From the NCBI GenBank assembly GCA_038087875.1, contig CM075977.1, positions 131,564,001-131,628,000 on the forward strand: DNA of 64,000 nt, written 5' to 3'. This stretch comes from Malacoraja senta. Lineage: Eukaryota. Every line of letters starts with the position of its first letter. Within the stretch, counting starts at the first letter, position 1. The position numbers and the translations under genes were made by a program. This document shows, piece after piece, positions 4,288-44,550 of this stretch. The notes below the pieces were generated by a model that was not told the DNA's origin, ran no database searches, and saw nothing but the letters and a program-made list of their open reading frames with translations.

Positions 4288-4486
4288 TGCAGGAAGGAAC
4301 TGCAGATGCTGGTTTACACCAAAGATAGACACAAAATGCTGGAGTAACTCAGAAGTTCAGGCAACACCTCTGGCGAAAAGGAATAGGTAACATTTCAGGT
4401 TTCAACCCGAAACAACACCTATTCCTTTTCTCCAAATATGCTGCCTGACCCATTGAGTTACTTCAGCATTTTGTGTCTATCTTCAG
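4288..4486. repeat. Palindromic short element built from two inverted PLE terminal repeats
   Basis: AAGATAGACACAAAATGCTGGAGTAACTCAG... and its near reverse complement ...TGAGTTACTTCAGCATTTTGTGTCTATCTT. Confidence 0.75.
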
Positions 4487-6204: not shown

Positions 6205-8207
6205 ATGGAATTTAAGGTGGAAGAGTTTGTTGAGACTCCTAGCCTACAGATGTTTCATCAATGTACTAAGGAAAATTCTACACAGCCAGTTCAGAACATG
6301 GAGGCCGTCATTAAACTGAAGATGGAGCTTGAGTCACAGAGAATGGCCTTAAAAAAGGATGAACTCATGCATGTTCTTGAAATGAAACGGCTTGAGGAGG
6401 AAACCAAAAGGGCTGAATTTCAGCTGCGGGAGAAGGAATTGGATGCCTCCCGGGTTCCTTCTAGGGAACGGGAGTTTGATATGAGCAAGAACATCTGCCT
6501 GGTTCCCCCCTTTAGTGAGAAGGATGTGGACAAGTTTTTCACAGTGTTTGAACGGGTGGCTTTGTCCTTGAAGTGGCCTAGGGACGTGTGGACCTTGCTA
6601 TTGCAGAGTGTCCTTGTGGGAAAAGCACGGGAGGTGTACTCGTCTTTGTCTGGTGACAGCAGTCTGGATTATGAGTGTGTGAAGTCTACAGTATTAAGGG
6701 CTTATGAATTAGTTCCAGAGGCGTACCGGCAGAAATTCCGGCGCTTTAAGAAGTTTGATAGTCAGACTTATGTGGAGTTTGCTAGGGAGAAGGAGGCACT
6801 TTTTGACAGGTGGTGCGCTTCTCAAGGAGTGAAGGACATTGGGCAACTGCGGGCCTTGATAATTATGGAAGACTTTAAGAACTGTCTCCCTCAGAGGGTT
6901 ACTACTTACCTTAATGAGCAGTAGGTGAATGAGGTGTCTAAGGCCGCGGTGTTGGCAGATGAGTATGTATTGACTCATAAAACTGATTTTGTTGGGCGCT
7001 CCTATAGTTTTGGTGCACGGCCGGTTGATTTTGGTGGTGTCGCCGGTGGCAGTGTCAAAGGTGTTTCTGTGCCTGCAAGTGGCAGCACGTTGATACAGGG
7101 GGAGGTCCGAGCTGATAAGGTTGACGGAAATTTGAGGACCAACGAAGGTCCTGTGTGCTACTATTGTAAAGGGAGAGGGCACATGTTAAAGGCATGTCCC
7201 GTTCTGAAGCAGAAAAATGCAAAGCCTGTGGCTTTGGTGGGTACACAGAAGGCACCTGTGGTACCTGGGGTCCCTGAGTCTGATGAGTGTAGGGATTATT
7301 CTGCATTCATCATGAATGGTTTTGTTTCTCTGGAGGATGGGGGCGATAGAGTTCCAGTATCCATCTTGCGTGATACTGGTGCTACTCAGTCCTTTATATT
7401 GGAGAGTGTACAGCCATTTTCTGCGGAATCATCGGTTGGGTCAAGTGTCCCTGTGGTAGGATTCGGGATGGATGACATGGTAGTGCCTTTGCATACCGTG
7501 AGTCTCGAGTCCGAGTTGGTTTCAGGCCGGGTAACTGTTGGGTTACGGCCGTGTTTTCCCGTTGGGGGAGTTTCTGTAATTTTGGGGAATGACTTGGCAG
7601 GAGGTAGAGTTTTAGTTACTCCTGAGGTGATGGCTGTTCCGATGGTGCAGAGTCCTGATAGATTGGCTATTCAGCATCCGAAGGTCTTCGCAGCTTGTGC
7701 TGTCACGAGGGCTATGGCTAAGAGCCAGGCAAAGTTTGAGGATGTAGTGGACCTGAGTGAGAGCATTTTGGGGGATCAGGATGAGGGATCCTGTGTTGTG
7801 AAGGGTGTTTCTACATCTCAAGATGGGATAGTGTCTGAAAATGGGCCGGTGTCGCTGTCACGGGACCGGCTGGTTGAGGAGCAGAAGAGTGATCCAGGTT
7901 TATCTGATCTGTTCGACTGCGCGGTGCCTGAGGGGGATATAGATTCCACAGCAAAGGGGTATTTTCTAAGGGAGGGCTTACTGATGCGAAAGTGGTCTCC
8001 CTTGGATGTATCTGGGCATGATGATTGGAGCATGGTTGATCAGATTGTGATACCTCGTCGGTATAGGGACGAGATACTCTGTTTGGCTCATGATGGTCCT
8101 CTGGGTGGACATTTGGGGGTCAATAAAACGTATCTTACGGAATTTTGTTTGGCCAGCGTTGAAAAAGGACGTGTAACAGCAGTGCAGGTGTTGTCACATT
8201 TGCCAGG
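6205..8207 (+). pseudogene. Gmr1-like Gypsy gag (SCAN-like region, CCHC)-protease-integrase N-terminus, 3'-truncated
   Basis: LVPPFSEKDVDKFF...YELVPEAYRQKFR...EDFKNCLP; CYYCKGRGHMLKAC; protease LRDTGA; then AHDGPLGGHLGVNKT with no intervening RT; in-frame TAG at 6922-6924. Confidence 0.85.
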
Positions 8208-8257
8208 TAACAGTCCACGACCTCACTAACAAACCTGTCTACGTTTACATCCAAGTC

Positions 8258-9181: not shown

Positions 9182-12100
9182 TTTTCTTTCTTTTTTTAAA
9201 TTTATATTAATTGTTTTTATTTTTATTTGAAGCTGTGTACAAAAATATAAACCGCGGCATATGACATAATACATTTATTGTACAGCTTCAATTTTAATTT
9301 TTAGCTAAGATGAAAAAGAAAAAGAGAGAGAAAGTGAAAGAGAAAGTGAATGTGTAAGAATAGAACCCCTAGACTACCAAATTGGTGTAGTCAAAGACTG
9401 AGTAAGTAAAATAAATGAGAAAAACATAAAGAAATAAAAAGACAAAAACAGAAAGAAAAACTAAAAGTGATGATATACCTGCTTCGTATCTCTCCCCACC
9501 CATCACCCAACCCGTAAGTCGGTTTAATTCCAAAGTTGTGTTGCACCATACTATCCTTGTAATGAATCAATGAATGGAATCCATGTCTTCGAAAATTGCT
9601 CTGTTTTTTCTGCTAAGACAAGTCTCATATTTTCAAGATGTAGCGTCTCAGACATGTTTGTAATCCACATTTTAAGAGTGGGGGCAGATGTATTTTTCCA
9701 AAATTTAAGTATTAGTTTTTTCGCCGTTATCAGGCCATAATTAAGGAAACGTCTTTGAAATATTGATTGCTCAGGGCAGGCTTCTGATGTTCCGAAAATA
9801 ATCAGTTCCGTGTGGGGGTCCATTTTTATTTTTAATATTTTTGAGAAAATTTCAAAAATTCCTTTCCAAAAGTTATGTAGTTTTATGCAAGAGGCAAAGG
9901 AATGTGTTATAGTTGCTTCTTGAAGGAGACTTTTGTCACAAATAGGAGATAAATTTGAAAAGATCTTATTCAGTTTAGTCTTTGAGTAGTAGAGTCTGTG
10001 CAGTGTTTTAAATTGGATTAAAATGTGTCTAACATTAATCGAACAATTGTGTATATATAAAAGCTTTTCTTCCCATCTGTCTTTGGGAATTTTTAGGCCT
10101 AGTTCCTCTTCCCAGTCTCTTCTAATTGCGTCTGACGATGGAATTTCTATATTTATACAAATATGATGTTAGATTGTTTGACTCTGAGTTTCTATTCATA
10201 CATTCGTCTAATATATCTGGCAGCAGAGTTTGATAGTCATGTTTTCAAATAGTCTCGAATTTGAAGATATCTAAAATATTGATTACCTTTCAGGTGGTAT
10301 TTCGACTGTAATTTCTGAAATGACAGAAGATTTCCCATCTCGTAGAGATCTCCAAGTTTTTTAATTCCTAGTCTTTCCCAATAAGTAAATGTTTTATCTA
10401 TAATAGATGGCTTAAATGAAGGGTTATTAGCTATTAGTGAGAGAAGAGATAAATTTCTTAGTTTAAAAGTTGATTTTACTTGTCTCCAGATTCGTAAAGT
10501 GCTGTGAATAATCAGATTTTTATCATATAGTGTGTTCTTCAACTTTGTTGGGGAGAGAAGAATCGCGCCTATATTAAAAGTCGAGCAATCCTCTCTCTCC
10601 ATTATTAACCAGTCTACCTGTTGGCATGCGTTATCCAGCCAGTAAATTACATTTTTAATATTCGTTGCCCAATAATAGTATAAGAAATTGGGGAGAGCCA
10701 ATCCGCCCGTTTCTTTGGGTTTGCATAGATGTCCTTTATGAATTCTATGTTTTTATAATTCCAGATAAACTTTGTAATCCGAGAATCAAGATTTAAAAAA
10801 AAAAATTTAGGTATGTATATCGGTATTGATTGAAATAAATAGAAAATTTGTGGGAGGAAGATCATTTTTATAGCATTTATTCTGCCTATTAGAGACATCG
10901 GAAGTGTTTTCCAAAATTGAATAAGAGCGTTTAATTTAGTAACTAAAGGCGGGAAGTTTGCATTGAATAAAGAAGTATATTTTCTGGTTACCTGAACACC
11001 CAGATATTTGAATTTTTCCTTAGCAATTCTGAAAGGGAATTTTAAAAGGTGTGTTGGCTCTTGAGGTTTTATTGCCATAATTTCACTTTTGTTCCAGTTT
11101 ATTCTATATCCTGAAAAGGAACCGAATTCCTCTATAAGATTTAATATATTTGGAATGCTAACTATGGAATTGGTGGTTTATAATAATACATCATCAGCAT
11201 ATAATGATATTTTATTATTGGAGTGTTTAGTATTATAATCATGAAAGTTCGGATGTACTCTTATACTTTCCGCTAAGGGTTCAATCACAAGGGCAAATAA
11301 CAGGGGTGATAATGCACATCCCTGTCTATTGCCCCTGGATAGCTGAAATTTAGGAGAGAGTATGTGGTTAGTCAGTATTCCGGCAGTCGGCCTATCATAT
11401 AATAATTTTATCCATGAAATAAAATTCTCTCCCATCTGAAAATTTTGCAGTACTGTGAAAATATACTTCCATTCTACTTGGTCAAATGCTTTTTCTGCAT
11501 CTAATGAAATAATTGATAAGTCTTCTTCTTTAGTTCTGTATGTGTACATTATGTTAAAAAGGCGTCTCAAATTATCAAACCCCGTTTGATCCGAATGTAT
11601 TAATTTATTAACGTATTTACTTAATCTTCTTGCCAACGTTTTTGCTAGTATTTTCTGTCCTGTATTTAGCAGGGTGATTGCTCTGTATGATCCCAGGTCT
11701 TCTTTTTTGGGTGTAAGTGTGATAGTTGATTCAGCTGGTGTTTGTGGTAATGTATGTCCTTTAAATGCGTATGTATAAAGATTGTGTAAACGTGGGGAAA
11801 TTACCTCGTAAAATCTTTTATAAAATTCGTTACTGAAACCGTCTGGTCCTGGTGTTTTACCGTTCTTCAATGAATTGATTGTCTCTTCTATTTCTTTAAT
11901 TGAATTGTGTGATCCTAATTCCTCTTGTTCCAGCGGATTAAGTGTTGGAAGTTTACAGTTGTCCAGAAAGTTTGTAATTTTTCTGCTTTCTGTTGCTGTT
12001 TTGGATGTGTATAAGTTTTGATAAAATTGGGCAAATCTTTCATTAATGTCTTTTGGAAGCGTTAACAGTTCACCTTTATCTGATATAATTTTTCGGATAG

Positions 12101-18657: not shown

Positions 18658-20683
18658 CTGAGGTTCCTCTGGTCAATTTTGTTATTTGTATGTCTTAATC
18701 TTATTGGTACTCCTAAAATGCATCATTTCACACTTGATATATTAAAATCCATCTACCATTGATCAGCTCATTTCATCAACATATCAATGCCTCCCTGCAG
18801 CCTTTCGAAAGTTTCAAAGAAAATAAGGTGATGTAGTGAACAAAGAAGCAATGACCAATTGATGTCAATTTTATGTTTTAAAAGCTTCAAAGCTTAAAAT
18901 GGAAAACTGAAGTAGGTTAGAACTGTCTTTCTCTGATTTCCTTGAAATCCTCTCATTTTAACCATAATGTAGTCAAACACCTTAAATACAATCTGAAATC
19001 TAGTCATCTCTAATGATGCTTTGCTCTTAAGCATGTAATACAGCAATTTTATGTTTTTAGTACCAGATCGAGCACACTTCTGAGGTTGGCTAACAACCCA
19101 TTGGGACTGATGATATAATTATCAATACAAAATTGAATGTAACTAATTATAATAAAGTAATATCTGAAACTATACCCAGGGCTAGATTCAAGATCCATTA
19201 TTCTGCTCAAGCAGAACATTTTACCATTCAGCGTCTACTTTCACGTATTAGTAATGATTACTCATTCATAAAGAGCAATCAATTTTTCATATTTAGCAAA
19301 TGTGTACATCAAGAATCTGACTGAAAGACTATTTAATAGCTTTATAATAAACATTTTTACAAAGAACAAATTGGTGAATTAAATTTATTTTAAGGCACAA
19401 TACCTTGAAGAGAGCTGAAACATTCAATCTTCAAATATTTTATGCTGCATATTACTCTAAAGATTTTAGTTTAATTGTGTGACCACAAGGCTTAAAGCTA
19501 ATTTCAATTGACTGTTTATTAACCATATAAAATACAATGATTTGAACTCAGCTTGTTGGATTACTTGTTTTCCCAGGCAACAAATTTAGTACATCGAGTT
19601 CAGGGTAACACAGTGGTGCAGTTGTAGAGTTGCTACCTTCCAGTGGCAGAGACCCCGGTTCCAGATAAAATCACATTGATCAGGTCATAAGAATCAGACA
19701 TTCTCTACACTTTTCATGTGAGCAGGTCAGATATTTCCAGTGTCACATGAACACCTGACAATGTTGGCAATGACACAGCATTTATTTTGAGTAAGGGATT
19801 TAAAGCCCTGTCTCACGGTGCGAGTTGACCCACGAGTGACCCCGAGTGAAAGACTCGTGGTTGCGTTCGAGACTCCAAGTTTATGATCAACCGAGTTTAA
19901 CCGAGTTCCCACGTGTATGTCTAAGTTTGCCGTTTACTTCTCATTTCTGCGATGTTCCAAGTTCCTCTCCCGAGTTACCAAGTTCCTCTCGCGAGTTACT
20001 CTTGAGCCAACCGTGAATGAAGGCCTGTTTTAAGTATCAAATAGAGGAGCTGGACAGCATCTCATACAGTAAGTATATTCTGATTCAGTATTGAAAGTTA
20101 TTCAATTTCAGAACTTTAAAAAACTAGGCAAGATTTCGGCCCCGCACTCGTTGCCATTGTGCAACAAGGAGGCGGTGGCGGCAAAGCAAGTGTTAAAGAA
20201 GAGAGCTCCATCCTGCGGCTTTTTAAAGGTAGAATTCAGCGCGGCAGCATCTATTGATATGACCTACAAAGGGAAAATGCGCACCGTCCAGTGCCAGAGC
20301 TAGGCTGGGATCATTCTCTGCTCTCATCTCTCTCTTTCTGTGTGTGCATTTGCAGGGGGAAGAGCGGTCTACCTCGCTGGGGCACAAGACCTCTGCCGTC
20401 TGCCACTTGCAGCCATCAACTTGTTTGTTCCTTTGGTGCGCCTCATCTGCCCTGCTCCCATCCCAGCGCTGCCCCAGCTCTCTGCCCCATTCTCTTGGAA
20501 ATGTCGCTTCCGCCACTGTAACGAGGAGGGGTCCGGCTGGCTGGCTTGGTGGGTGGGTGGGTGGGTGAGCAGGGAGGGGGAGTGGGTACAAACCACCGAA
20601 TCCATTCTCAAAAGTCGGGCAGAGCCGTGTAGAACTCACGTTTCTCTCTGCTTCATATACGTGGGAATTCCCTCAGTATGGTC

Positions 20684-22232
20684 ACTCAGCGGGCAGGCAG
20701 CATCTCTGGAGAGAAGGAATGGGTGACGGGATGACGTTTAAAATTTATATCATGGGCAAACCATCTTGCCCCAGGCTGCTTTACATTATTTATTGTGTTG
20801 AGTTGTTTGTGAGGCTGGGACATCTCTGAGGGTCGCCACCTTGTAGTGGAGACATATGCGTCTGCCTTGATCCTGTAAGCAGGCCACATGGCAGGAAAGT
20901 CGAGGGGGAGGTCCCTGACAAAGGGCGGCCCAAGAAGATGACCTCAGTGGAACAGGCCGAGGATGGTGTTTGACCGGCGGCTGAGGCGGAAGAAGGCTGC
21001 AGCAGGGAGAGACTCCCAACCGTGGTGGAGCCCATATCATTGGACCCGGGACTGTCAGTGAATGTTGTCAGGTTAAAGAGGGTGGACTTGTCTGTTCTGA
21101 GCAGTCCCTGGGCTTCAGTCAAGGGTCAGTGTGTGGGGCAGTGCCCTGGAGTTTACATCCTGCTGATCCCTGTAGACATCCACCATGGTTCCCCGCTCCC
21201 CATCCCTCTCTCAATGTGTGACGGAGAATGGCCGAGACTCTAGTGTACTGAGTTTGAAGCCATTATCCTGTCAGTGAGGGTGATGAGAAACAGGAAGGAC
21301 AGTGAGTTGTCCCTTACCCCGACGTAAACAGCCCTTTATTCTGGAATCGACACCACTACCTCTGCTGATCTGGTTTAGAGAGGAAAGATCATAAAGCAAG
21401 GTCATATTCAACAAGTGCAGTTTGAGGACATTGGATTTTCCTCTCCACATTTTATTGTTTTTTGTAGCCAGAAAAGTCAAAACATGCAATCATTATTATC
21501 TTTAATTCTTACGTATCTTCGTGATGTAAACATTGTTAATCTCCAGTCAATTATATTCCCTCCTTTACTGAAACAACCCTGACTGATCATCTCTATGTCA
21601 TTGGGTTGGAGAACATGATCCCACAGGTGAACAACAGTTATCTCTCCGACAAACGACTGACTGGCGTCAAAACCTCCACCAACTGAGTCTTGTTCCTGAC
21701 CTAGAATAAACTGACCAGACCCTTTCACAACCTGACCCTTATCACCAACCTTCCGTACACTGCGTCTCCCATTGACCCAGACTGTTATCTCACCCCCTTG
21801 AGACTCCCAGGTCACACAGATGTGTCTCAGTAAAGAATTCATGTCTGGGATGTAAAACTCTGTTATAACATTTCCTAAATACAGCCAGAGTTGTGTTTTA
21901 GATTCTTCCCAAATCAGCAGTTCGTTGTCGGAAAAGCTCGTTGCGTAGGAGAGCACACTGTAAGAGTGAGTCGCTTCAGAGGCTGCCCTGAAACAGACAA
22001 CAAAGGCGGTCAAACTGGTGAAGTCAGGCGCATGCAACCTGACGAAGCTGTTGGATGTTTTGCTTGAAAATACCACTGATTTCGCATCCAATCCTGTAAA
22101 ATGTGAAGAGTTAAGATTGTCATATGTCAGTTTAAAGTTGCTGCAGATGGAGCACAAAGACGCAGCAGAAATTTGGAAAAGTCATCCCGTCACCCATTCC
22201 TTCTCTCCAGAGATGCTGCCTGCCCGCTTAGT
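20684..22232. repeat. 52-bp inverted repeat pair (20684-20735 / 22181-22232) derived from PLE terminal repeat
   Basis: ACTCAGCGGGCAGGCAGCATCTCTGGAGAGAAGGAATGGGTGACGGGATGAC and reverse complement with one mismatch. Confidence 0.9.
21477..22093 (-). CDS. Short pentraxin (C-reactive protein / serum amyloid P-like), terminal coding exon; signal-peptide exon not found
   Basis: Pentraxin signature HICVTWES, first Cys in AFVVCFR, DNELLI, ILGQEQDSVGGGFDASQSFVGEI, LWDHVL, GNIIDW; no stops over about 205 codons; acceptor CTTAACTCTTCACATTTTACAG|GA, phase 1, as in CRP/SAP exon 2; minus-strand AATAAA at 21451-56 and 20789-94. Confidence 0.9.
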
Positions 22233-23329
22233 TAAAGAGTGCCCACGGTAGACTCACGAGACACTAAGGTAAACTCACGGGCCACTACGTTCTTACAACG
22301 AGTTTAAATTTCAAATTTTAACCTCAAGAGTACATTTTACTCGTGGAAAAGTTTAAACATGTTTGAATTTTTCCAAGAGTTAACAAGTGTCACGGGTACC
22401 TGCCGTTAGCGTTAAGAGTCGCTAAGTTGCGTCCACGAGTTCCGACGTTCCCGCTACGTTAATCGTACGTGATTACCACGAGTTAAATTTATTTTAAGCT
22501 CGGGGTACCTCGTGGGTCAGCTCGCACCGTGAGACAGGGGTTTTAGCATCCAACCTATAACTGTCATTGAAAATTTACAGCGGAATCAGGGTGCATTGCA
22601 CGACTTTGTTTTAGTCTCTTGTTCACGAAAATTGTAACTGGTTACCTGTGACTGTGACCAACTGGTTAACTGGCCACAATCATTACTTCTGTGAAATTAA
22701 GAAACTAAGAGATAAGGACAGTAGGCAGAACTGGCTCCATAAGAGGCAGGAAGAAAGAGCATGCTACCTAAAGTTGGAGAATTTATTACACTGGGCAGAG
22801 TATTCTTGGATTGGCAGAGTTCGTTTTTCTTGGACAGGAGCAGGCTGTGGGGTGATCTGATAGAGGCATACAAATTAGGTGGATTTATCCACAAAGGGGT
22901 GGATAATGAGAAACATTTCCCCACAGTGCAAACCGGAGGATCGTTGTCCTCTTGAATCGAGCACCCTTGGAAGTGGTGGAGGCAGACAGTTGAAAGTATT
23001 TGGACAAGCATTTGTATCACAAAGGCATAAAAGGCTTCAGACGAAGTGCTGGTAAATGAGATCAGTATAGCTACCACTGGGAGTGTAGATCATGCATTTA
23101 CTGCCCAGATATATCGAACTGGCCAGTAACCAAAAGCCGTTCAGAACACTTTACTACCAAAATGTATCACAGATAGGCATTTGCTGCTTTCCCACCCAGC
23201 AGAGCAATTGCCTGTTTCGCACACATGTACCTGACAGATCACTAATACATTATCTTCATGGTCTATGTTTTTATTTCCTTAACAACTGACTATACACAAA
23301 GGTCTCCCAAAGATTCATCCAACAGTTAG

Positions 23330-25909: not shown

Positions 25910-26450
25910 TGGCGGCACAGTAGCGCAGGTGGTAGCTTTTCAGCACCAGCGACACAGGTTTGATTCTGACCTCAGGTGCTGTTTGTGTGGACCTCCCATG
26001 TTCTCCCTGTGACCGTGTGGCTTTCCTTCTGATGGTTTTGTTTCTTCCCATATCCCCAAGACTTGCGGGTTGATAGGTTATTAGGCCTCTGTAAATCATA
26101 GCTAGTGTTAAGGGAGCGGATGTGAAAGCGGGATAACATAGAACGAATATGAACAAGTGACCAATGTTCAACGTGGACTTAGTGTTAAAGAAGGAACTGC
26201 AGATGCTGGAAAATCGAAGGTACACAAAAATGCTGGAGAAACTCAGCGGGTGCAGCAGCATCTATGGAGCGAAGGAAATAGGTAACGTTTCGGGCCGAGT
26301 CTGAAGAAGGGTTTCGGCCCGAAACGTTACCTATTTCCTTCGCTCCATAGATGCTGCTGCACCCGCTGAGTTTCTCCAGCATTTTTGTGTACCTTCAACG
26401 TGGACTTGTTGGGCCGAAGTCCCAGCTTCTCTCAATTCTACTCAGCTCAA
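25910..26450 (+). mobile_element. V-SINE containing a palindromic PLE-derived insertion (26188-26396)
   Basis: SINE head GGCGGCACAGTAGCGCAG; perfect 83-bp inverted arms 26216-26298 / 26314-26396; AACGTGGACTT repeated on both sides. Confidence 0.85.
26301..26329 (+). ncRNA. Minimal type I hammerhead-ribozyme-like core of PLE terminal repeat
   Basis: CUGAAGA-A-GGGU(UUCG)GCCC-GAAACGUU: conserved CUGAnGA and GAAA boxes, stem II tetraloop hairpin, palindromic ACGU stem III. Confidence 0.65.
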
Positions 26451-28277: not shown

Positions 28278-28337
28278 AATGAGGACCTGCACAGCAAATG
28301 GATTACATGGTGCTATCAAATACGGGATAGGAACTAA

Positions 28338-28653
28338 AAGCCCTGTTCCACTGTATGAGTTAATTCAAGAGTTCTCCCGAGTTTGCCCTGATTTGAACTC
28401 GGAGATTTATGGTAATGGCCACTCGTAGGTACTCAGGGCTCTCGTGGACATTTTTCAACATGTTGAAAAATCTTCACGAGTCTTCCCGAGCTTACCGTGT
28501 TTCCCGAGTACCTGCCGTTAGCATTACGAGCCGCTAAGAGACGTCCCCGAGCTCTGACGTACCCGCTACGTACATTCTACGTGCTTCCACGAGTTAGATT
28601 TTTTTTAAACTCGGGAGAGCTCTTGAATGAACTCGTACAGTGGGACAGGGCTT
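28338..28653. mobile_element. PIF/Harbinger-like MITE (316 bp)
   Basis: AAGCCCTGTTCCACTGTATGAGTTAATTCAAGAG...CTCTTGAATGAACTCGTACAGTGGGACAGGGCTT; TAA at 28335-37 and 28654-56. Confidence 0.85.
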
Positions 28654-30127
28654 TAACTGAAGTTTTTCAGGCGAAAGGTAAATTGGTAATTTGTCCCAGG
28701 CATCTATACTGTGAACCCTCTTGTTTATAATGCACTGAAGCAAGACTAGGCCGGTAGAGTGAAATAGTTTTTATTTACAGAAAACAAAACTAAAACTCGT
28801 GAAAACCACGTGCCTAGCTGAGCTTACAAACACAGCTCCTGTCGCTGGGAGGAGTGCTGATAACTAGCTAAAAGCTCGCGAACTAACCTCTGTGGTCACG
28901 TGAAGGGCCAAACAATGATGAGGGTTCTGACTTCCCAGCCCCACCACTAGGTGCCGCTACAGGACCCCCTCCCCCCCCCCCCCCCCCAGAACCAGAGGAA
29001 AGGAAACGAGCGGGAGTCCGAATCAGGCGGCCAGACCGAGTGAAGACAGGGGGAACCGGCATAACATGTACAACCGGCACAACAGGCGGAACAGGCACAA
29101 CAGGTGCAACCAGCGAAAGCGGGATAGCCAGCGGACGACCTCTACGCCGGGGTTGGGCCACCAAAATACAGATGGGTGGGCTTGAGGCGGGCCGCCGAAA
29201 CAATCTCCTCACGGCCCCCGACATCCAAAATAAAAGTCGCGATGCCAGGCCGCAACACCTGGAAAGGACCCTCATTAGGCCGCTGCAGCGGAGTCCGGTG
29301 CGAGTCCCTGCGGAACTAAAAGGCAGTCCTTGAGCGCAGGCGGAACATAAGAAGGAGCAACACCGTGGCGAGAGGTCAGAACAGGAGCCAGTCCACCCAC
29401 TTTCTCCCGAAGGTGCGCCAGCACAGACGAAGTGGGCTCCTGCGGCCCCCGAACCGCAGGAAGGAAATCACCGGGCACCTTCAGCGTGGAGCCATAAACC
29501 AGGTCCACAGAAGACATGTCCAAATCCGCCTTAGCGGCCGTGCGGATTCCCAGCAACACCCATGGCAACTCGTCCACCCAATCCGGGCCTGTGAGGCGCG
29601 CTTTCAACGCGGACTTCAGATGCCGGTGAAACCGCTCAACCAACCCGTCGGCCTGTGGATGGTACGCACTTGTGTGATGCAGCTGCGCACCGTACAGCTG
29701 AGCCATGGCTGACCACAGGGCAGAGGTGAACTGAGCACCGCGGTCTGAGGAGATGTCAGCAGGAACACCAAAACGTTCAGGCAGCGGAATGGCCTCGGGC
29801 CACCTCGTGAAACGGTTCACAATCATCAGCAAGTGGGTAGCACCCTGGGACATCGGCAGAGGATCCACCAGGTTGACATGAATGTGCTCGAACCGGTGTT
29901 GAGGGTCGGCGAAATCTTGGAGCGGTGCACGTACATGCCGCTGGAACTTGGACGTCTGGCAGGGAATGCAGGCCCTGGCCCAGGCCCTGGCCCCAACCTG
30001 CTTGCGGAGGCCATGCCAGACAAACTTGGCCGCCACCAATGCAGAAGTCGCCCGGATGGGAGGGTGGGCCAGCCCGTGAATGGAGTCAAACACACGCTGT
30101 TGCCAACCCGCTGGGACGATGGGCAAG

Positions 30128-33100
30128 TAGACAATAGACAATAGGTGCAGGAGTAGGCCATTCGGCCCTTCGAGCCAGCACCGCAATTCAATGTGATCAT
30201 GGCTGATCATCCCCAATCAGTACCCTATTCCTGCCCTCTCCCCATATCCCCTGACTCCGCTATTATTAAGAGCCCTATCTAGCTCACTCTTGAAAGCATC
30301 CAGAGAACCTGCCTCCACCGCCCTCTGAGGCAGAGAATTCCACAGACTCACCACTCTCTGTGAGAAAAAGTGTTTCCTCGTCTCCATTCTAAATGGCTTA
30401 CTGCTTATTCTTAAACTGTGGCTAAATGTTTAAGAAGGAACTGCAGATGCTAGAAAATCAAAGGTAGACAAAAGTGCTGGAGAAATTCAGCGGGTGCAGC
30501 AGCAGCTATGGAACGAAGGAAATAGGCAACGTTTCGGGCCAAAACCCTTCTTCAGACTGATGTAGGGTGGGGGGGGGGCGGGGAGAAGAAAGGAGAAAGG
30601 AAGAGGACAAGCCCAAGGGCTGAGGGAGAGCTGAGAAGGGGAGGAGACAGCAAGGGCTACCGGAAATTGGAGGTCAATGTTTATGCCGCTAGGGTGCAAA
30701 CTGCCCAAGCGGAATATGAGGTGCTGCTCCTCCAATTTCCGGTGGTGCTCACTCTGGCCATGGAGGAGGCCCAGGACAGAAAGGTCGGATTTGGAATGGG
30801 AGGGGGAATTGAAGTGCAGAGCCACAGGGAGATCAGGTTTTATTAATGCGGACCGAGCGGAGGTGTTCGGCGAAACGATCGCCAAGCCTACGCTTGGTCT
30901 CACCGATGTAGATCAGCTGACATCTAGAGCAGCGGATGCAATAGATGAGTTTGGAGGAGATGCAGGTCACACCTGGAACGACTGCTTGGGTCCTTGAATG
31001 GAGTCGAGGGGGGAGGTAAAGCGACAAGTGTAGCATCTCTTGCGGTTGCAAGGGAAAGTGCCCGGGGAGGGGGTGGTGCGGGAGGGAAGGGAAGAATTGA
31101 CCAGGGAGATACGGAGGGAGCGGTCTTTGCAGAAAGCAGACAGGGGGGTAATGGGAAGATGTGGCAAGTGGTCGGGTCACGTTGGAGGTGGCGAAAATGA
31201 CGGAGGACTATTTGTTGTATGTGACGGCTAGTGGGGTGAAAGGTGAGGACTAGGGGGACTCTGCCCTTGTTATGAGTGGGGGGATGGGGAGAGAGAGCAG
31301 TGTTAGGGTATTGAAGAGACCCTGGTGAGAGCCTCATCTATAGTAGGGGAGGGGAACCCCCGTTCCCTGAAGAATAAGGACATTTCCGATGCCCTGGTGT
31401 GGAACACCTCATCCTGGGAGCAGATGCGGCATAGACGTAGGAATTGGGAGTAGGGGATGGAGTCCTTACAGGAAGCAGGGTGGGAAGAAGTGTAGTCCAG
31501 ATAGCCATGGGAGTCAGTGGATTTATAGTGGATGTCGGTCAGAAGTCTATCACCTGCGATGGAGATAGTGAGGTCAAGATATTGTAGGGAAGTGTCGGAA
31601 ATGGTCCAGGTGTATTTGAGTGCCGAATGGAAGTTAGTGGTGAAGCGGATGTAGTCAGTCAGTTGTGTGTGGGTGCAGGAGGTAGCACCAAAGCAATTGT
31701 CGATGTAGCGGAGGTAGAGGTCAGGGAGGGGGCCCTGGTATGCCTCGAACAAGGATTGTTCGACGTACCCTACAAAGAGCAGGCATAGCTGGGGCCCATG
31801 CACGTGCCAATAGCTATGCCTTGTATTTGGAGGAAATGGGAGGAGTCAAATGAGAAGTTATTAAAGGTAAGGACCAGCTCCGCTAGGCAGAGGAGAGTAT
31901 CTGTAGATGGGGATTGGTTGGTTCTCCGGTCGAGGAAGAACCGGAGGGCTTTGAAACCCTCCTGGTGGGGGATGGTGGTGTAGAGTGACTGGACGTCCAT
32001 GATGAAGATGAGGGGATGGAGGCCTAGCGAATGGAATGCCCGGAGATGACGGAGAGTGTCTGAGATCTCTTGAACATAGGTAGGGAGGGATTTAACCAGG
32101 GGGGGATAGGATGGAGTAAAGGTATGTGGAAATAAGTTCGGTATGGCACGAACAGGCAGAGACAATGGGTCTACCAGGACAGTCAGGTTTGTGGATTTTG
32201 GGGGAAGGTAAAATCGGGCAGTGCGGAGCTGTGGAATGATAAGGCTGGAGGCTTGGGAGGGCAGGGAGCCGGAGTGGATGAAGTCAGTGATGGTGCTAGA
32301 GATAGTAGCCTGGTGCTCGTCTGTGGGGTCATGGTCCAGGGGTAGGTAGGAGGAGGTGTCCAAGAGTTGGCGCGTGGCCTCAGCTTTGTAGAGATCGACG
32401 CGCAAGACTACCATGGCACCTCCCTTGTCGGCGGGTTTGATAACCCGGTCTGGGTTGTTGCGGAGTGAGTCGATGGCTGTACGTTTAGGGGGAAGAGTTT
32501 GGAGTGAGACAGGGGAGTGGAGAAGTTTAGGAGCTTGATGTCCCGCCGGCAATTTTGAATAAAAAGGTCTAAAGCCGGAAGGCCATGAGGGGGGATCCAC
32601 GAGGAGGGGGTTCGTTGGAGACGGGAAAGGGGCCCCTGGTTCTGGACTCCCCCAATATCAGGAACATGTTTCCTGCCTCTAGCGTGTCCAAAACCTTAAC
32701 AATCTTATATGATTCAATGAGATCCCCTATCATCCTTCTAAACTCCAGAGAGTACAAGCCCAGCTGCTCCATTCTCTCAGTATGTGACAGTCCCACCATC
32801 CCAGGAATTAATCTTGTAAACCTACGCTGCACTCCCTCAATAGCAAGAATGTCCTTCCTCAAATTAGAGTACCAAAACTGCACACAATACTCCAGGTGTG
32901 GTCTCACTAGGGCTCTGTACAACTGCAGAAGGACATCTTTGCTCCTATATTCGATTCCTCTTGTTATAAAGGACAACATGCCATTCACTTTCTTCACTGC
33001 CTGCTGTACCTGCATGCTTACTCTCATAGACTGATGTACAAGGACCCCCTGATCTCGTTGTACTTCCCCTTTTCCCAACTTGACGCCATTTAGATAGTAA

Positions 33101-33460
33101 TCTGCCTGCCTGTTTTTGATACCAAAGTGGATAACCTCACATTTATCCGCATTAAACTTCATCTGCCATGCATCTGCCCACTCCCCCAACCTGTCCAAGT
33201 CACCCTGCATTCTCAAATCCTCCTCCTCACAGTTCATACTGCCACCCAGCTTTGTGTCATCTGCAAATTTGCTAATGTTACTTTGAATCCCTTCATCCAA
33301 ATCATTGATGTATATTGTAAATGGCTGCGTTCCCAGCACTGAGCCTTGCGGTACCCACTATTCACTGCCTGCCATTCTGAAAGGGACCCGTTAATCCCTA
33401 CTCTTTGTTTCCTGTCTGCCAACCACTTCTCTATCCATGTCAGCACTCTACCCCCAATAC
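30128..33460 (-). mobile_element. CR1 (HER1-like) LINE inserted in the Gypsy, itself split by a PLE
   Basis: ORF 32569-33339 INDLD...SKFADDTK...LVRPHLEYCVQFW...TRG; 3' tail 30128-30422 with (GACAATA)n; TTAAACTGTGGC|CCCTGGTTC joins across the PLE. Confidence 0.9.
30424..32630 (-). mobile_element. Penelope-like element: RT + GIY-YIG endonuclease + terminal repeat, frameshifted
   Basis: IKPADKGGAMVV, MDVQSLYTTIP, GIAIGTCMGPSYA, RYIDN (YIDD variant), LIYCIRCSRCQLIYIGETKRRLGDRFAEH; hammerhead-like core near 30526-30553 on minus. Confidence 0.92.
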
Positions 33461-44467: not shown

Positions 44468-44550
44468 GTAACGTCACCCATTCCTTTTCTCCAGAGATGC
44501 TACCAGAGGGGCAGGTAGCATCTCTGGAGAAAAGGAATGGGTGACGTTAC
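44468..44550. repeat. Perfect 37-bp inverted repeat of PLE terminal sequence (9-nt spacer)
   Basis: GTAACGTCACCCATTCCTTTTCTCCAGAGATGCTACC / GGTAGCATCTCTGGAGAAAAGGAATGGGTGACGTTAC. Confidence 0.9.

What the first reader, a model, noticed from the sequence alone, without database searches (positions are those of the whole stretch)
20684..22232. Second, inner inverted repeat: the pentraxin cassette sits at the centre of a Penelope terminal palindrome, with both junctions at the hammerhead cleavage motif
Seen: the 1.45-kb cargo is bracketed by a 52-bp inverted repeat (51/52) of PLE terminal sequence, in the same outward orientation as the empty palindromes at 4288-4486 and 26216-26396. On both arms, similarity to the PLE terminus starts at CGTC-ACCCATTCC (the GUC of GAAACGUC) and is preceded by the same non-consensus GTCATCC, so one arm was apparently copied from the other. 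Established: PLEs carry hammerhead motifs, form inverted terminal repeats and can retain introns. Inference: a two-step relay in which PLE machinery captured intron-containing host sequence and a DNA transposon then packaged it.
Basis: partly seen in the sequence, partly recalled or inferred. Interest (0 to 1): 0.75.

Follow-up and report, generated by a model that had tools for sequence, protein, structure and literature searches.

The report
Pentraxin exon between inverted retroelement stubs
In a skate genome, a piece of an immune pentraxin gene sits between two inverted stubs of a tiny Penelope-type retroelement inside a cut-and-paste Harbinger transposon that has spread it to tens of sites; this shows how gene fragments get moved, but the passenger looks functionless.

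Summary
The inverted repeat is real: 51/52 in the core and 58/63 overall. Both arms are the same internal piece of an abundant mini-Penelope repeat. They share one outer end and the odd GTCATCC, which no other copy in hand carries.

All DNA between the arms is host DNA from the native pentraxin locus, in two colinear pieces:
- Y (20741-21063), which lies about 5 kb downstream of the gene in Amblyraja radiata.
- 3' flank, intact exon 2 and 63 nt of intron 1 (21064-22156).

Host homology begins 0-1 nt from the left arm and 24 nt from the right arm. The right arm's inner flank repeats the left junction, including six bases of Y (p about 0.003). The arms therefore come from one copying event on a template that was already a host-Penelope fusion.

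The hammerhead link fails. The ribozyme core is missing from both arms, and the junctions are not at the cleavage site.

The cassette lies in a 2,740-bp Harbinger-type element with TTA duplications, present in tens of copies. A Leucoraja erinacea copy is a deletion derivative without the left arm.

Best reading (about 0.45): Penelope-style copying made the cassette, and the Harbinger element spread it. The scan has noted another copy 5.78 Mb away (s1-206906, s1-206964).

The parts
19800..19802 (.). Left target-site duplication TTA of the outer element
   Evidence: Read directly. The same TTA is at 22543-22545.
19803..20070 (+). Left terminal inverted repeat and left backbone (HarbL) of the Harbinger-type non-autonomous element
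   Evidence: TIR pair found by the repeat finder, 45 nt at 91%; 40/47 on my recount. 88% identical to L001 11805-11564 at a different locus. Word depth about 10^4 times single copy in four skate runs.
20071..20683 (.). Segment X: origin unknown, absent from the Leucoraja copy, itself repeated
   Evidence: No match in L001-L006 or elsewhere in the window. Depth 50-1600 times single copy. Its right end holds an inverted copy of the subterminal motif at 19903-19919 (pair I7).
20684..20739 (-). Left arm: internal piece of the mini-Penelope repeat, its sense strand on the window's minus strand. GGATGAC at 20729-20735; GTTT at 20736-20739 resumes the repeat's sequence.
   Evidence: The repeat finder extends the arm to 20746 because the next 7 nt also pair imperfectly with the right side.
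20741..21063 (-). Segment Y: native DNA from about 5 kb downstream of the donor pentraxin gene, in the same order and orientation as the gene piece
   Evidence: 90.4% identical to A. radiata L003 13493-13174. Its right end (CAGTGAATGTTGT) overlaps the block that is syntenic between A. radiata and Rhinoraja. In the native locus, Y is not next to any Penelope copy.
21064..21476 (-). Pentraxin 3' UTR and downstream flank
   Evidence: Colinear with L002 and L003 native genes and with L001. AATAAA lies 21 and 137 nt after the stop codon, so the fragment runs past the likely mRNA end.
21477..22093 (-). Complete pentraxin exon 2 with stop codon, open reading frame intact, HxCxTWxS signature present
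   Evidence: Pfam Pentaxin E = 7.7e-54. 81% identical to A. radiata SAP-like, 86% to Rhinoraja and 93% to the L. erinacea copy. Translation has no stop codon.
22094..22156 (-). Last 63 nt of pentraxin intron 1, with the splice acceptor (ttttacag)
   Evidence: Aligned with the native introns of L002 and L003. Homology ends at ...GATGGAGCACA.
22157..22180 (.). 24-nt filler between host DNA and right arm. Its last 12 nt (AAATTTGGAAAA) are an imperfect inverted copy of the left junction (AAATTTTAAAC).
   Evidence: Not in the native introns. 9/11 matches when anchored at the arm; 0.3% of random window 12-mers do as well. Also present in L001.
22181..22232 (+). Right arm: the same internal piece of the mini-Penelope repeat, sense strand on plus. 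GTCATCC at 22181-22187.
   Evidence: The same arm with the same two boundaries is in L001 9854-9791.
22233..22542 (+). Right backbone (HarbR) and right terminal inverted repeat of the Harbinger-type element
   Evidence: 78% identical over 157 nt to the 320-bp MITE at 28337-28654. Depth about 10^4 times single copy.
22543..22545 (.). Right target-site duplication TTA

Best explanation
One replicative event, most likely by Penelope-type reverse transcription, copied a template in which a 5'-truncated mini-Penelope copy was already fused to sequence downstream of a skate pentraxin gene.

Proposed steps:
1. Synthesis started in the Penelope piece and ran through at least 3.4 kb of the locus: downstream DNA, polyadenylation signals, exon 2 and into intron 1.
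2. A second, short, inverted copy of the first 75 nt or so (the Penelope piece plus six bases of host sequence) was made at the other end. This could happen by priming from both cut target strands or by self-priming. It gave the head-to-head arms.
3. The product ended up inside a non-autonomous Harbinger/PIF element.
4. Harbinger transposase then moved the composite to tens of sites, each with a TTA duplication.
5. Microhomology-mediated deletions produced the window type (which lost about 5 kb of A. radiata-coordinate native DNA) and the Leucoraja type (which lost X, the left arm and Y).

Shown: the anatomy, the native origin and colinearity of the cargo, the shared derived features of the arms, the copied junction, the Harbinger ends and the copy number.

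Inferred: that the copying enzyme was a Penelope reverse transcriptase, that the template was RNA, and that the cassette landed in the Harbinger element rather than being captured by it.

The arms cannot form a hammerhead, and the cargo shows no sign of function.
For: - Arms are identical in extent and share GTCATCC, which is found only in this cassette's arms.
- The head-to-head orientation matches the TSD-flanked empty palindromes.
- Host homology abuts the arms: 0-1 nt on the left, a 24-nt filler on the right.
- Y and the gene piece are colinear pieces of one native locus, and Y overlaps a block conserved in two species.
- The right inner flank copies the left junction, including host letters AAATTT, p about 0.003. 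The host-Penelope junction therefore existed before the second arm was made.
- The native loci of two species have no Penelope copy at either boundary.
- Published behaviour of Penelope-like elements fits. [quoted passage not shown] Intron-containing host genes have been found framed by the elements' repeats, and self-priming has been proposed (PMC3846280). The purified protein cuts and extends both strands and starts copying internally (PMC11167929).
- Harbinger part: TIRs and TTA/TTA; a copy at another locus in L. erinacea.
- The run X1 holds this insertion's flank with 0 mismatches. The contig bridging the Y|gene junction has about 33 times the single-copy depth.
Against: - Both arms stop 25-60 nt short of the repeat's usual 3' ends, and the cassette has no target-site duplication. 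An ordinary target-primed insertion does not look like this.
- The cargo runs far beyond two AATAAA signals and begins inside an intron. That is what genomic DNA looks like; an RNA template would have to be a long unspliced read-through or antisense transcript.
- No native locus with a Penelope copy next to Y was found, though only A. radiata could be checked.
- No cargo-free Harbinger copy showing the empty site, and no cassette outside Harbinger ends, could be searched for.
- No link between the mini-repeat and an RT/GIY-YIG-coding element was tested.
Confidence: 0.45

Rival explanations
1. DNA-level capture by the Harbinger element (Pack-type transduplication). During gap repair after excision, or during replication, synthesis switched templates several times. 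It picked up X, a mini-Penelope fragment and the pentraxin locus. A switch back onto its own first 75 nt, in inverted orientation, produced the second arm. No reverse transcriptase was involved.
For: - The cargo is genomic in character: an intron tail, exon 2, sequence past the polyadenylation signals and DNA about 5 kb downstream.
- There is filler at the right junction and short microhomologies at the deletion junctions.
- The cassette has no target-site duplication, and its arms are truncated on the outside.
- Both copies whose sequence could be examined lie inside Harbinger backbone, and the scan's note on a third copy describes the same arrangement.
Against: - Inverted Penelope stubs placed exactly at both ends of the host DNA, in the orientation typical of Penelope insertions, would be a coincidence.
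- This model still needs a donor in which the Penelope fragment was already joined to Y, because both arms share that junction.
- The Pack-type captures I know of (plant Pack-MULEs; own knowledge, not checked here) do not bracket the cargo with retroelement inverted repeats.
Confidence: 0.27
2. The Harbinger element first received an ordinary empty mini-Penelope palindrome. Later the palindrome broke at its centre, as long palindromes tend to do, and the break was repaired by copying in DNA from the pentraxin locus.
For: - Empty head-to-head palindromes of this family are common. There are two in this window, and many joints appear in the read data.
- The host DNA sits exactly at the centre, and both arms are cut back to nearly the same inner point.
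- The shared AAATTT is its own reverse complement, so it could be a remnant of the old centre used as microhomology.
Against: - The letters inside the arms (AAATTT, GG/T, AAAA/C) are not the repeat's sequence at that position, so they are not an old Penelope centre.
- AAATTT is native to Y in A. radiata.
- The outer truncation and the missing target-site duplication are still unexplained.
Confidence: 0.15
3. Two unrelated insertions of a common subfamily variant happen to flank a pentraxin pseudogene.
For: The repeat is extremely abundant, at about 10^5 times single-copy depth.
Against: - Both arms have the same outer end, the same inner oddity and the same junction letters.
- Neither arm has its own target-site duplication.
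- 0 of about 14 other copies carry GGGATGAC.
- The host DNA ends exactly at the arms.
Confidence: 0.03

Closest known systems
Penelope-mediated mobilisation of intron-containing host genes in the rotifer Adineta vaga (Arkhipova, Yushenova and Rodriguez 2013, PMC3846280)
   Same: Host genomic-looking sequence with intron material is framed by Penelope terminal-repeat sequence, including an inverted copy. The authors propose self-priming and template jumps.
   Different: In the rotifer the repeats are full pLTRs (two direct and one inverted) and the insert has an 8-bp target-site duplication. Here the arms are only 52-63-nt internal stubs, inverted, with no duplication. The cargo is a gene fragment plus distant downstream DNA, and the unit lies inside a DNA transposon.
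Inverted 5'-truncated copy at the 5' end of Penelope-like insertions (Craig et al. 2021, PMC8557442), and two-strand cleavage and extension by a purified Penelope-like element protein (Frangieh et al. 2024, PMC11167929)
   Same: A head-to-head arrangement with a short inverted copy beside a long one. Both arms start at one point of the template.
   Different: Here the long copy would be a host-Penelope chimera. The start point is not the family's usual 3' end.
Pack-type gene-fragment capture by DNA transposons
   Same: A non-autonomous TIR element carries a host gene fragment with intron sequence and amplifies it. The passenger drifts.
   Different: The outer element is Harbinger/PIF-like, in a cartilaginous fish. 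The cargo is bracketed by retroelement stubs, which points to a retroelement-made intermediate.
Minimal hammerhead ribozymes of Penelope-like element repeats (Cervera and de la Pena 2014, PMC4209133)
   Same: The repeat family behind the arms has CUGAAGA, a helix II, GAAAC and GUC at its 5' end, with an unpaired base before helix II. This matches their minimal descriptor.
   Different: Both cassette arms have lost CUGAAGA and helix II, so no ribozyme can form. No Rfam hammerhead model matched anywhere in the window.

Membership tests
Penelope-mediated host-sequence mobilisation (as in PMC3846280) | Host sequence framed by Penelope terminal-repeat sequence | tested here: met
   Arms at 20684-20739 and 22181-22232. 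Host homology abuts them.
Penelope-mediated host-sequence mobilisation (as in PMC3846280) | Arms reach the element's normal 3' end or tail | tested here: not met
   Both arms stop at ...GAGTTA / ...GAGTGA, 25-60 nt short of the ends seen in other copies.
Penelope-mediated host-sequence mobilisation (as in PMC3846280) | Target-site duplication around the whole insert | tested here: not met
   The flanks ...CAGTATGGTC and TAAAGAGTGC... share nothing. The empty palindrome at 26216-26396 has a 12-14-nt duplication.
Penelope-mediated host-sequence mobilisation (as in PMC3846280) | Intron sequence retained in the cargo | tested here: met
   63 nt of intron 1 with the splice acceptor, aligned to the native introns.
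Penelope-like element (the repeat family of the arms) | Link to an element encoding RT plus GIY-YIG endonuclease | not tested
   The RT-bearing reading frames in the window (11181-11870, 32572-33339) were not linked to this repeat.
Penelope-like element (the repeat family of the arms) | Minimal hammerhead motif in the repeat | tested here: inconclusive
   CTGAAGA-N-GAAAYGTY is intact in 2 copies in the window against 0.01 expected. Rfam hammerhead models give no hit at gathering score or at E <= 10. The motif is absent from both cassette arms.
Penelope-like element (the repeat family of the arms) | Head-to-head inverted 5'-truncated copy with target-site duplication | tested here: met
   26216-26396 is flanked by CAACGTGGACTT on both sides, and 4288-4486 has a similar structure.
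PIF/Harbinger non-autonomous element | Terminal inverted repeats | tested here: met
   19803-19849 against 22496-22542, 40/47.
PIF/Harbinger non-autonomous element | 3-bp TWA target-site duplication | tested here: met
   TTA at 19800-19802 and at 22543-22545. The related 320-bp MITE at 28337-28654 has TAA on both sides.
PIF/Harbinger non-autonomous element | DDE transposase and Myb-like protein in an autonomous relative with matching ends | not tested
   The element has no such reading frame. No autonomous relative was looked for.
PIF/Harbinger non-autonomous element | Copies at unrelated loci | tested here: met
   L001 (L. erinacea CM054022.1) has different flanks. Terminal depth is about 10^4 times and cargo depth 15-70 times single copy.
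Pack-type transduplication | Host fragment joined directly to transposon backbone without a retroelement signature | tested here: not met
   Penelope stubs lie between the host DNA and the backbone on both sides in the window, and on the right side in L001.

The most novel reading that the evidence does not exclude
A long read-through transcript of a pentraxin gene ran into a truncated mini-Penelope copy downstream. Penelope machinery reverse-transcribed it, intron included, with an inverted short copy at the far end, straight into a Harbinger MITE. The MITE's transposase then spread the immune-gene exon to tens of loci. This would be a vertebrate case of a retroelement and a DNA transposon acting in relay. 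In some copies, such as this one, the exon and its splice acceptor are still intact and available for exonisation.
Probability: 0.35. Interest if true: 0.65.

Novelty: new variant of a known kind. Interest (0 to 1): 0.45.

Why it matters
Gene-fragment shuffling by transposons is a source of new exons and of false gene copies in annotations.

Penelope-like elements are the only retroelements reported to move intron-containing host genes, and that rests on very few cases in rotifers. A vertebrate case would extend it. Here the retroelement-made product was then amplified by a DNA transposon, which would show that the two transposon classes can act in sequence. It would also warn that intron-bearing copies of immune genes in skate assemblies can be transposon cargo: one copy is annotated as 'mucosal pentraxin-like' in L. 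erinacea.

The cargo itself appears to be a drifting passenger, so the interest is in the mechanism, not in physiology.

Tried and rejected
- **Rfam scans.** The whole window at gathering score and the empty palindrome at E <= 10 gave no hammerhead hit, only hairpin look-alikes of microRNA precursors. The hammerhead statement therefore rests on the motif read by eye plus a pattern count.
- **An earlier reading of mine.** I first took the Leucoraja copy as ancestral and the left arm as a later addition. I dropped this when Y proved to be native DNA from the same locus. Two independent deletions from a longer ancestor explain both copies without any coincidence of breakpoints.
- **Splicing as the cause of the missing 5 kb.** The ends of the missing stretch are not GT..AG on either strand, and there is only 2 nt of microhomology. 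I rejected splicing.
- **The filler as diverged intron.** The 24-nt filler is only about 67% like the native intron, next to flanks that are 91% identical. I judged it not homologous.
- **More copies through protein searches.** Searches found only P0022 and the native genes.
- **L. erinacea native genes.** Three loci (L004-L006) are 80-83% paralogues. They lack Y and are not the donor.
- **X and Y against everything in hand at word size 7**. X matches nothing. Its origin stays unknown.
- **Read-data joints across the arms**. They mostly reflect generic palindromes of the family and the point where this reference departs from the family's usual sequence. I drew no conclusion from them about cleavage-site ends.
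- **Folding the whole cassette.** It was over the tool's length limit, and I did not pursue it.

Full report
**Observation**

The inverted repeat exists as described. The repeat finder gives arms 20684-20746 and 22170-22232, 63 nt, 92% complementary, 1423 nt apart. My recount gives 51/52 for the core and 58/63 overall. The 31-nt core of the arms occurs six times in the window at up to 3 mismatches, against none in shuffles, so the arms belong to a real repeat family.

Aligning the arms with nine other copies shows the family's unit. In the sense orientation it starts with GTCTGAAGAAGGGTCTCGACCCGAAACGTC, continues ACCCATTCC...GCTGAGTTA, and ends 25-60 nt further on. The first 30 nt match the published minimal hammerhead of Penelope-like elements: CUGAAGA, an unpaired base, a helix II, GAAAC and GUC (PMC4209133). 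Rfam's hammerhead models do not match anywhere. An intact motif is found in only two copies in the window.

The 'empty' palindromes at 4288-4486 and 26216-26396 are head-to-head pairs: an inverted 5'-truncated copy next to a fuller copy. The second is flanked by a 12-14-nt duplication. This is the arrangement described for Penelope-like elements (PMC8557442).

**The arms**

Both arms are the same internal piece of the unit, in the same head-to-head orientation as the empty palindromes.
- They share one outer end (...GAGTTA / ...GAGTGA), which is short of the unit's normal 3' ends. They have no target-site duplication.
- On the inside both carry GTCATCC before CGTCACCC. This is most simply a 7-8-nt tandem duplication, because the unit's sequence resumes beyond it (AAAC on the left, GAAAA on the right).
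- Among the roughly 16 copies in the window and fetched loci, only the cassette's arms have this feature.
- The catalytic part of the hammerhead (CUGAAGA and helix II) is missing from both arms.
- The junctions lie in the GAAAC box, not at the cut after GUC. An RNA end produced by self-cleavage would begin at ACCC.

The hammerhead link in the finding's title is therefore not supported. Because the ribozyme motif occupies the first 30 nt of the unit, any head-to-head junction must fall in or near it.

**What lies between the arms**

The genome is a skate's. The 226-aa reading frame at 21477-22157 (minus strand) is a pentraxin domain (Pfam E = 7.7e-54). Its closest proteins come from Amblyraja radiata, Rhinoraja longicauda and Leucoraja erinacea.

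I fetched the native genes of Rhinoraja (L002) and A. radiata (L003).
- Window 21064-22156 is colinear with them. It comprises 3' flank, the whole of exon 2 (21477-22093) and the last 63 nt of intron 1 with the splice acceptor.
- AATAAA signals lie 21 and 137 nt after the stop codon, so the fragment runs well past the likely mRNA end.
- The 320 bp next to the left arm (Y, 20741-21063) is 90% identical to A. radiata DNA about 5 kb further downstream of the same gene, in the same order and orientation.
- Y's right end overlaps a block that is syntenic between A. radiata and Rhinoraja. Y is therefore native DNA, not a stray repeat.

So everything between the arms except 24 nt of filler comes from one native locus, with an internal deletion. 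The deletion junction has 2 nt of microhomology and no splice-site ends. Host homology begins 0-1 nt from the left arm and 24 nt from the right arm. In both native loci there is no Penelope copy at either boundary.

**The copied junction**

The last 12 nt of the filler (AAATTTGGAAAA) are an imperfect inverted copy of the left junction (AAATTTTAAAC). The AAATTT in that left junction is native to Y in A. radiata. Anchored at the arm, 9 of 11 letters match, and only 0.3% of random 12-mers from the window do as well.

The right arm was therefore copied from a template in which the Penelope piece was already joined to Y. Together with the common outer end, this indicates one copying event. The left arm is the one continuous with the host sequence, and the right arm is a short inverted copy of about 75 nt.

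**The outer element and its copies**

The element spans 19803-22542 (2,740 bp). It has terminal inverted repeats (40/47) and TTA on both sides, the hallmark of PIF/Harbinger elements. A related 320-bp MITE with TAA duplications lies at 28337-28654.

In four skate sequencing runs the termini have about 10^4 times single-copy depth, the arms about 10^5 times, and the cargo 15-70 times. Run X1 holds this insertion's right flank with no mismatch, so it is the same species. Its contig across the Y|gene junction has about 33 times single-copy depth. The window-type structure was therefore amplified after its internal deletion. The scan's own notes report another copy with the same 52-bp repeats 5.78 Mb away; I did not check that copy.

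A copy in L. erinacea (L001, annotated 'mucosal pentraxin-like') lies at an unrelated locus.
- It has the left backbone, the right arm with GTCATCC and the same filler, and a pentraxin fragment that continues 600 bp further into the native 3' flank.
- It lacks X, the left arm and Y.
- Its left junction shows CAG microhomology.

Both copies are explained as independent deletion derivatives of a longer ancestor: backbone, X, left arm, native DNA from Y to intron 1, filler, right arm, backbone.

**Age and selection**

- The two cargo copies differ by 3.8%.
- Synonymous distance is 0.09 to the A. radiata gene and 0.18 to the Rhinoraja gene. This places the capture on the Rajidae side after the split from the Rhinoraja lineage.
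- dN/dS between the copies is 0.6, on 24 changes. The L. erinacea exon has two 2-bp deletions. The window's exon is intact.

Nothing indicates selection on the passenger.

**Mechanism**

The anatomy is what Penelope-like elements are reported to produce:
- an inverted 5'-truncated copy beside a long copy (PMC8557442);
- host sequences with introns framed by their repeats, with self-priming and template jumps proposed (PMC3846280);
- a protein that cuts and extends both target strands and starts copying internally (PMC11167929).

My best reading (0.45) is that such machinery copied a chimeric template, made the short inverted copy, and the product came to lie in a Harbinger element, which then spread it.

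Three things weaken this reading:
- The outer ends of the arms are unusual.
- There is no target-site duplication.
- The cargo looks like genomic DNA.

These points keep two DNA-level rivals alive. One is template-switching capture by the Harbinger element (0.27). The other is repair of a broken pre-existing palindrome (0.15). Chance flanking by two unrelated insertions is effectively excluded (0.03).

**Verdict**

The hammerhead-cleavage link and the 'pentraxin cassette' description need correcting. The order 'captured, then packaged' is not shown. This is a new variant of known kinds of transposon-mediated gene-fragment capture, of moderate interest.

Noticed in passing
window 28337-28654; L003 6679-6980: A 320-bp Harbinger-type MITE with TAA duplications. 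A copy 86% identical to it sits in intron 1 of the native A. radiata pentraxin gene, only about 220 bp from the point where the captured fragment begins. It is in the opposite orientation to the composite's right end. Rhinoraja has a different repeat at that spot.
   Followed up: partly
window 20071-20683: Segment X is absent from the L. erinacea copy and from every locus fetched. It contains a (GGGT)n tract and a GC-rich stretch, and shows 50-1600 times single-copy depth in skate runs. Its origin is unknown; it could be another captured fragment or a longer Harbinger backbone.
   Followed up: partly
window 44472-44546: A tail-to-tail palindrome of the same mini-Penelope repeat, in which 3'-truncated ends meet at the centre. 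This is the opposite of the usual head-to-head form.
   Followed up: no
L001 9079-9647: In the L. erinacea copy the right end is rearranged. A tRNA-derived SINE is inserted, a 102-nt inverted duplication of the subterminal region follows, and no right terminal repeat is left. This copy can probably no longer move.
   Followed up: partly
L003 9374-11956; window 30427-31705: A 2.6-kb insertion downstream of the A. radiata pentraxin gene. Its two halves (L003 9374-10685 and 10677-11956) match window 30427-31705 at about 85% identity in opposite orientations, so it is a large inverted repeat. In the window that stretch lies between retrotransposon reading frames with integrase and RT domains (29278-30216, 32572-33339).
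   Followed up: no
window 6205-8229: Adjacent reading frames with SCAN, zinc-knuckle and integrase zinc-binding domain hits. They look like a gag/pol remnant of an LTR retrotransposon.
   Followed up: no
L002 12454-12457 against window 21120-21299: The Rhinoraja native gene (annotated 'LOW QUALITY PROTEIN') lacks 180 bp of 3' flank that both cargo copies and a paralogue retain.
   Followed up: no
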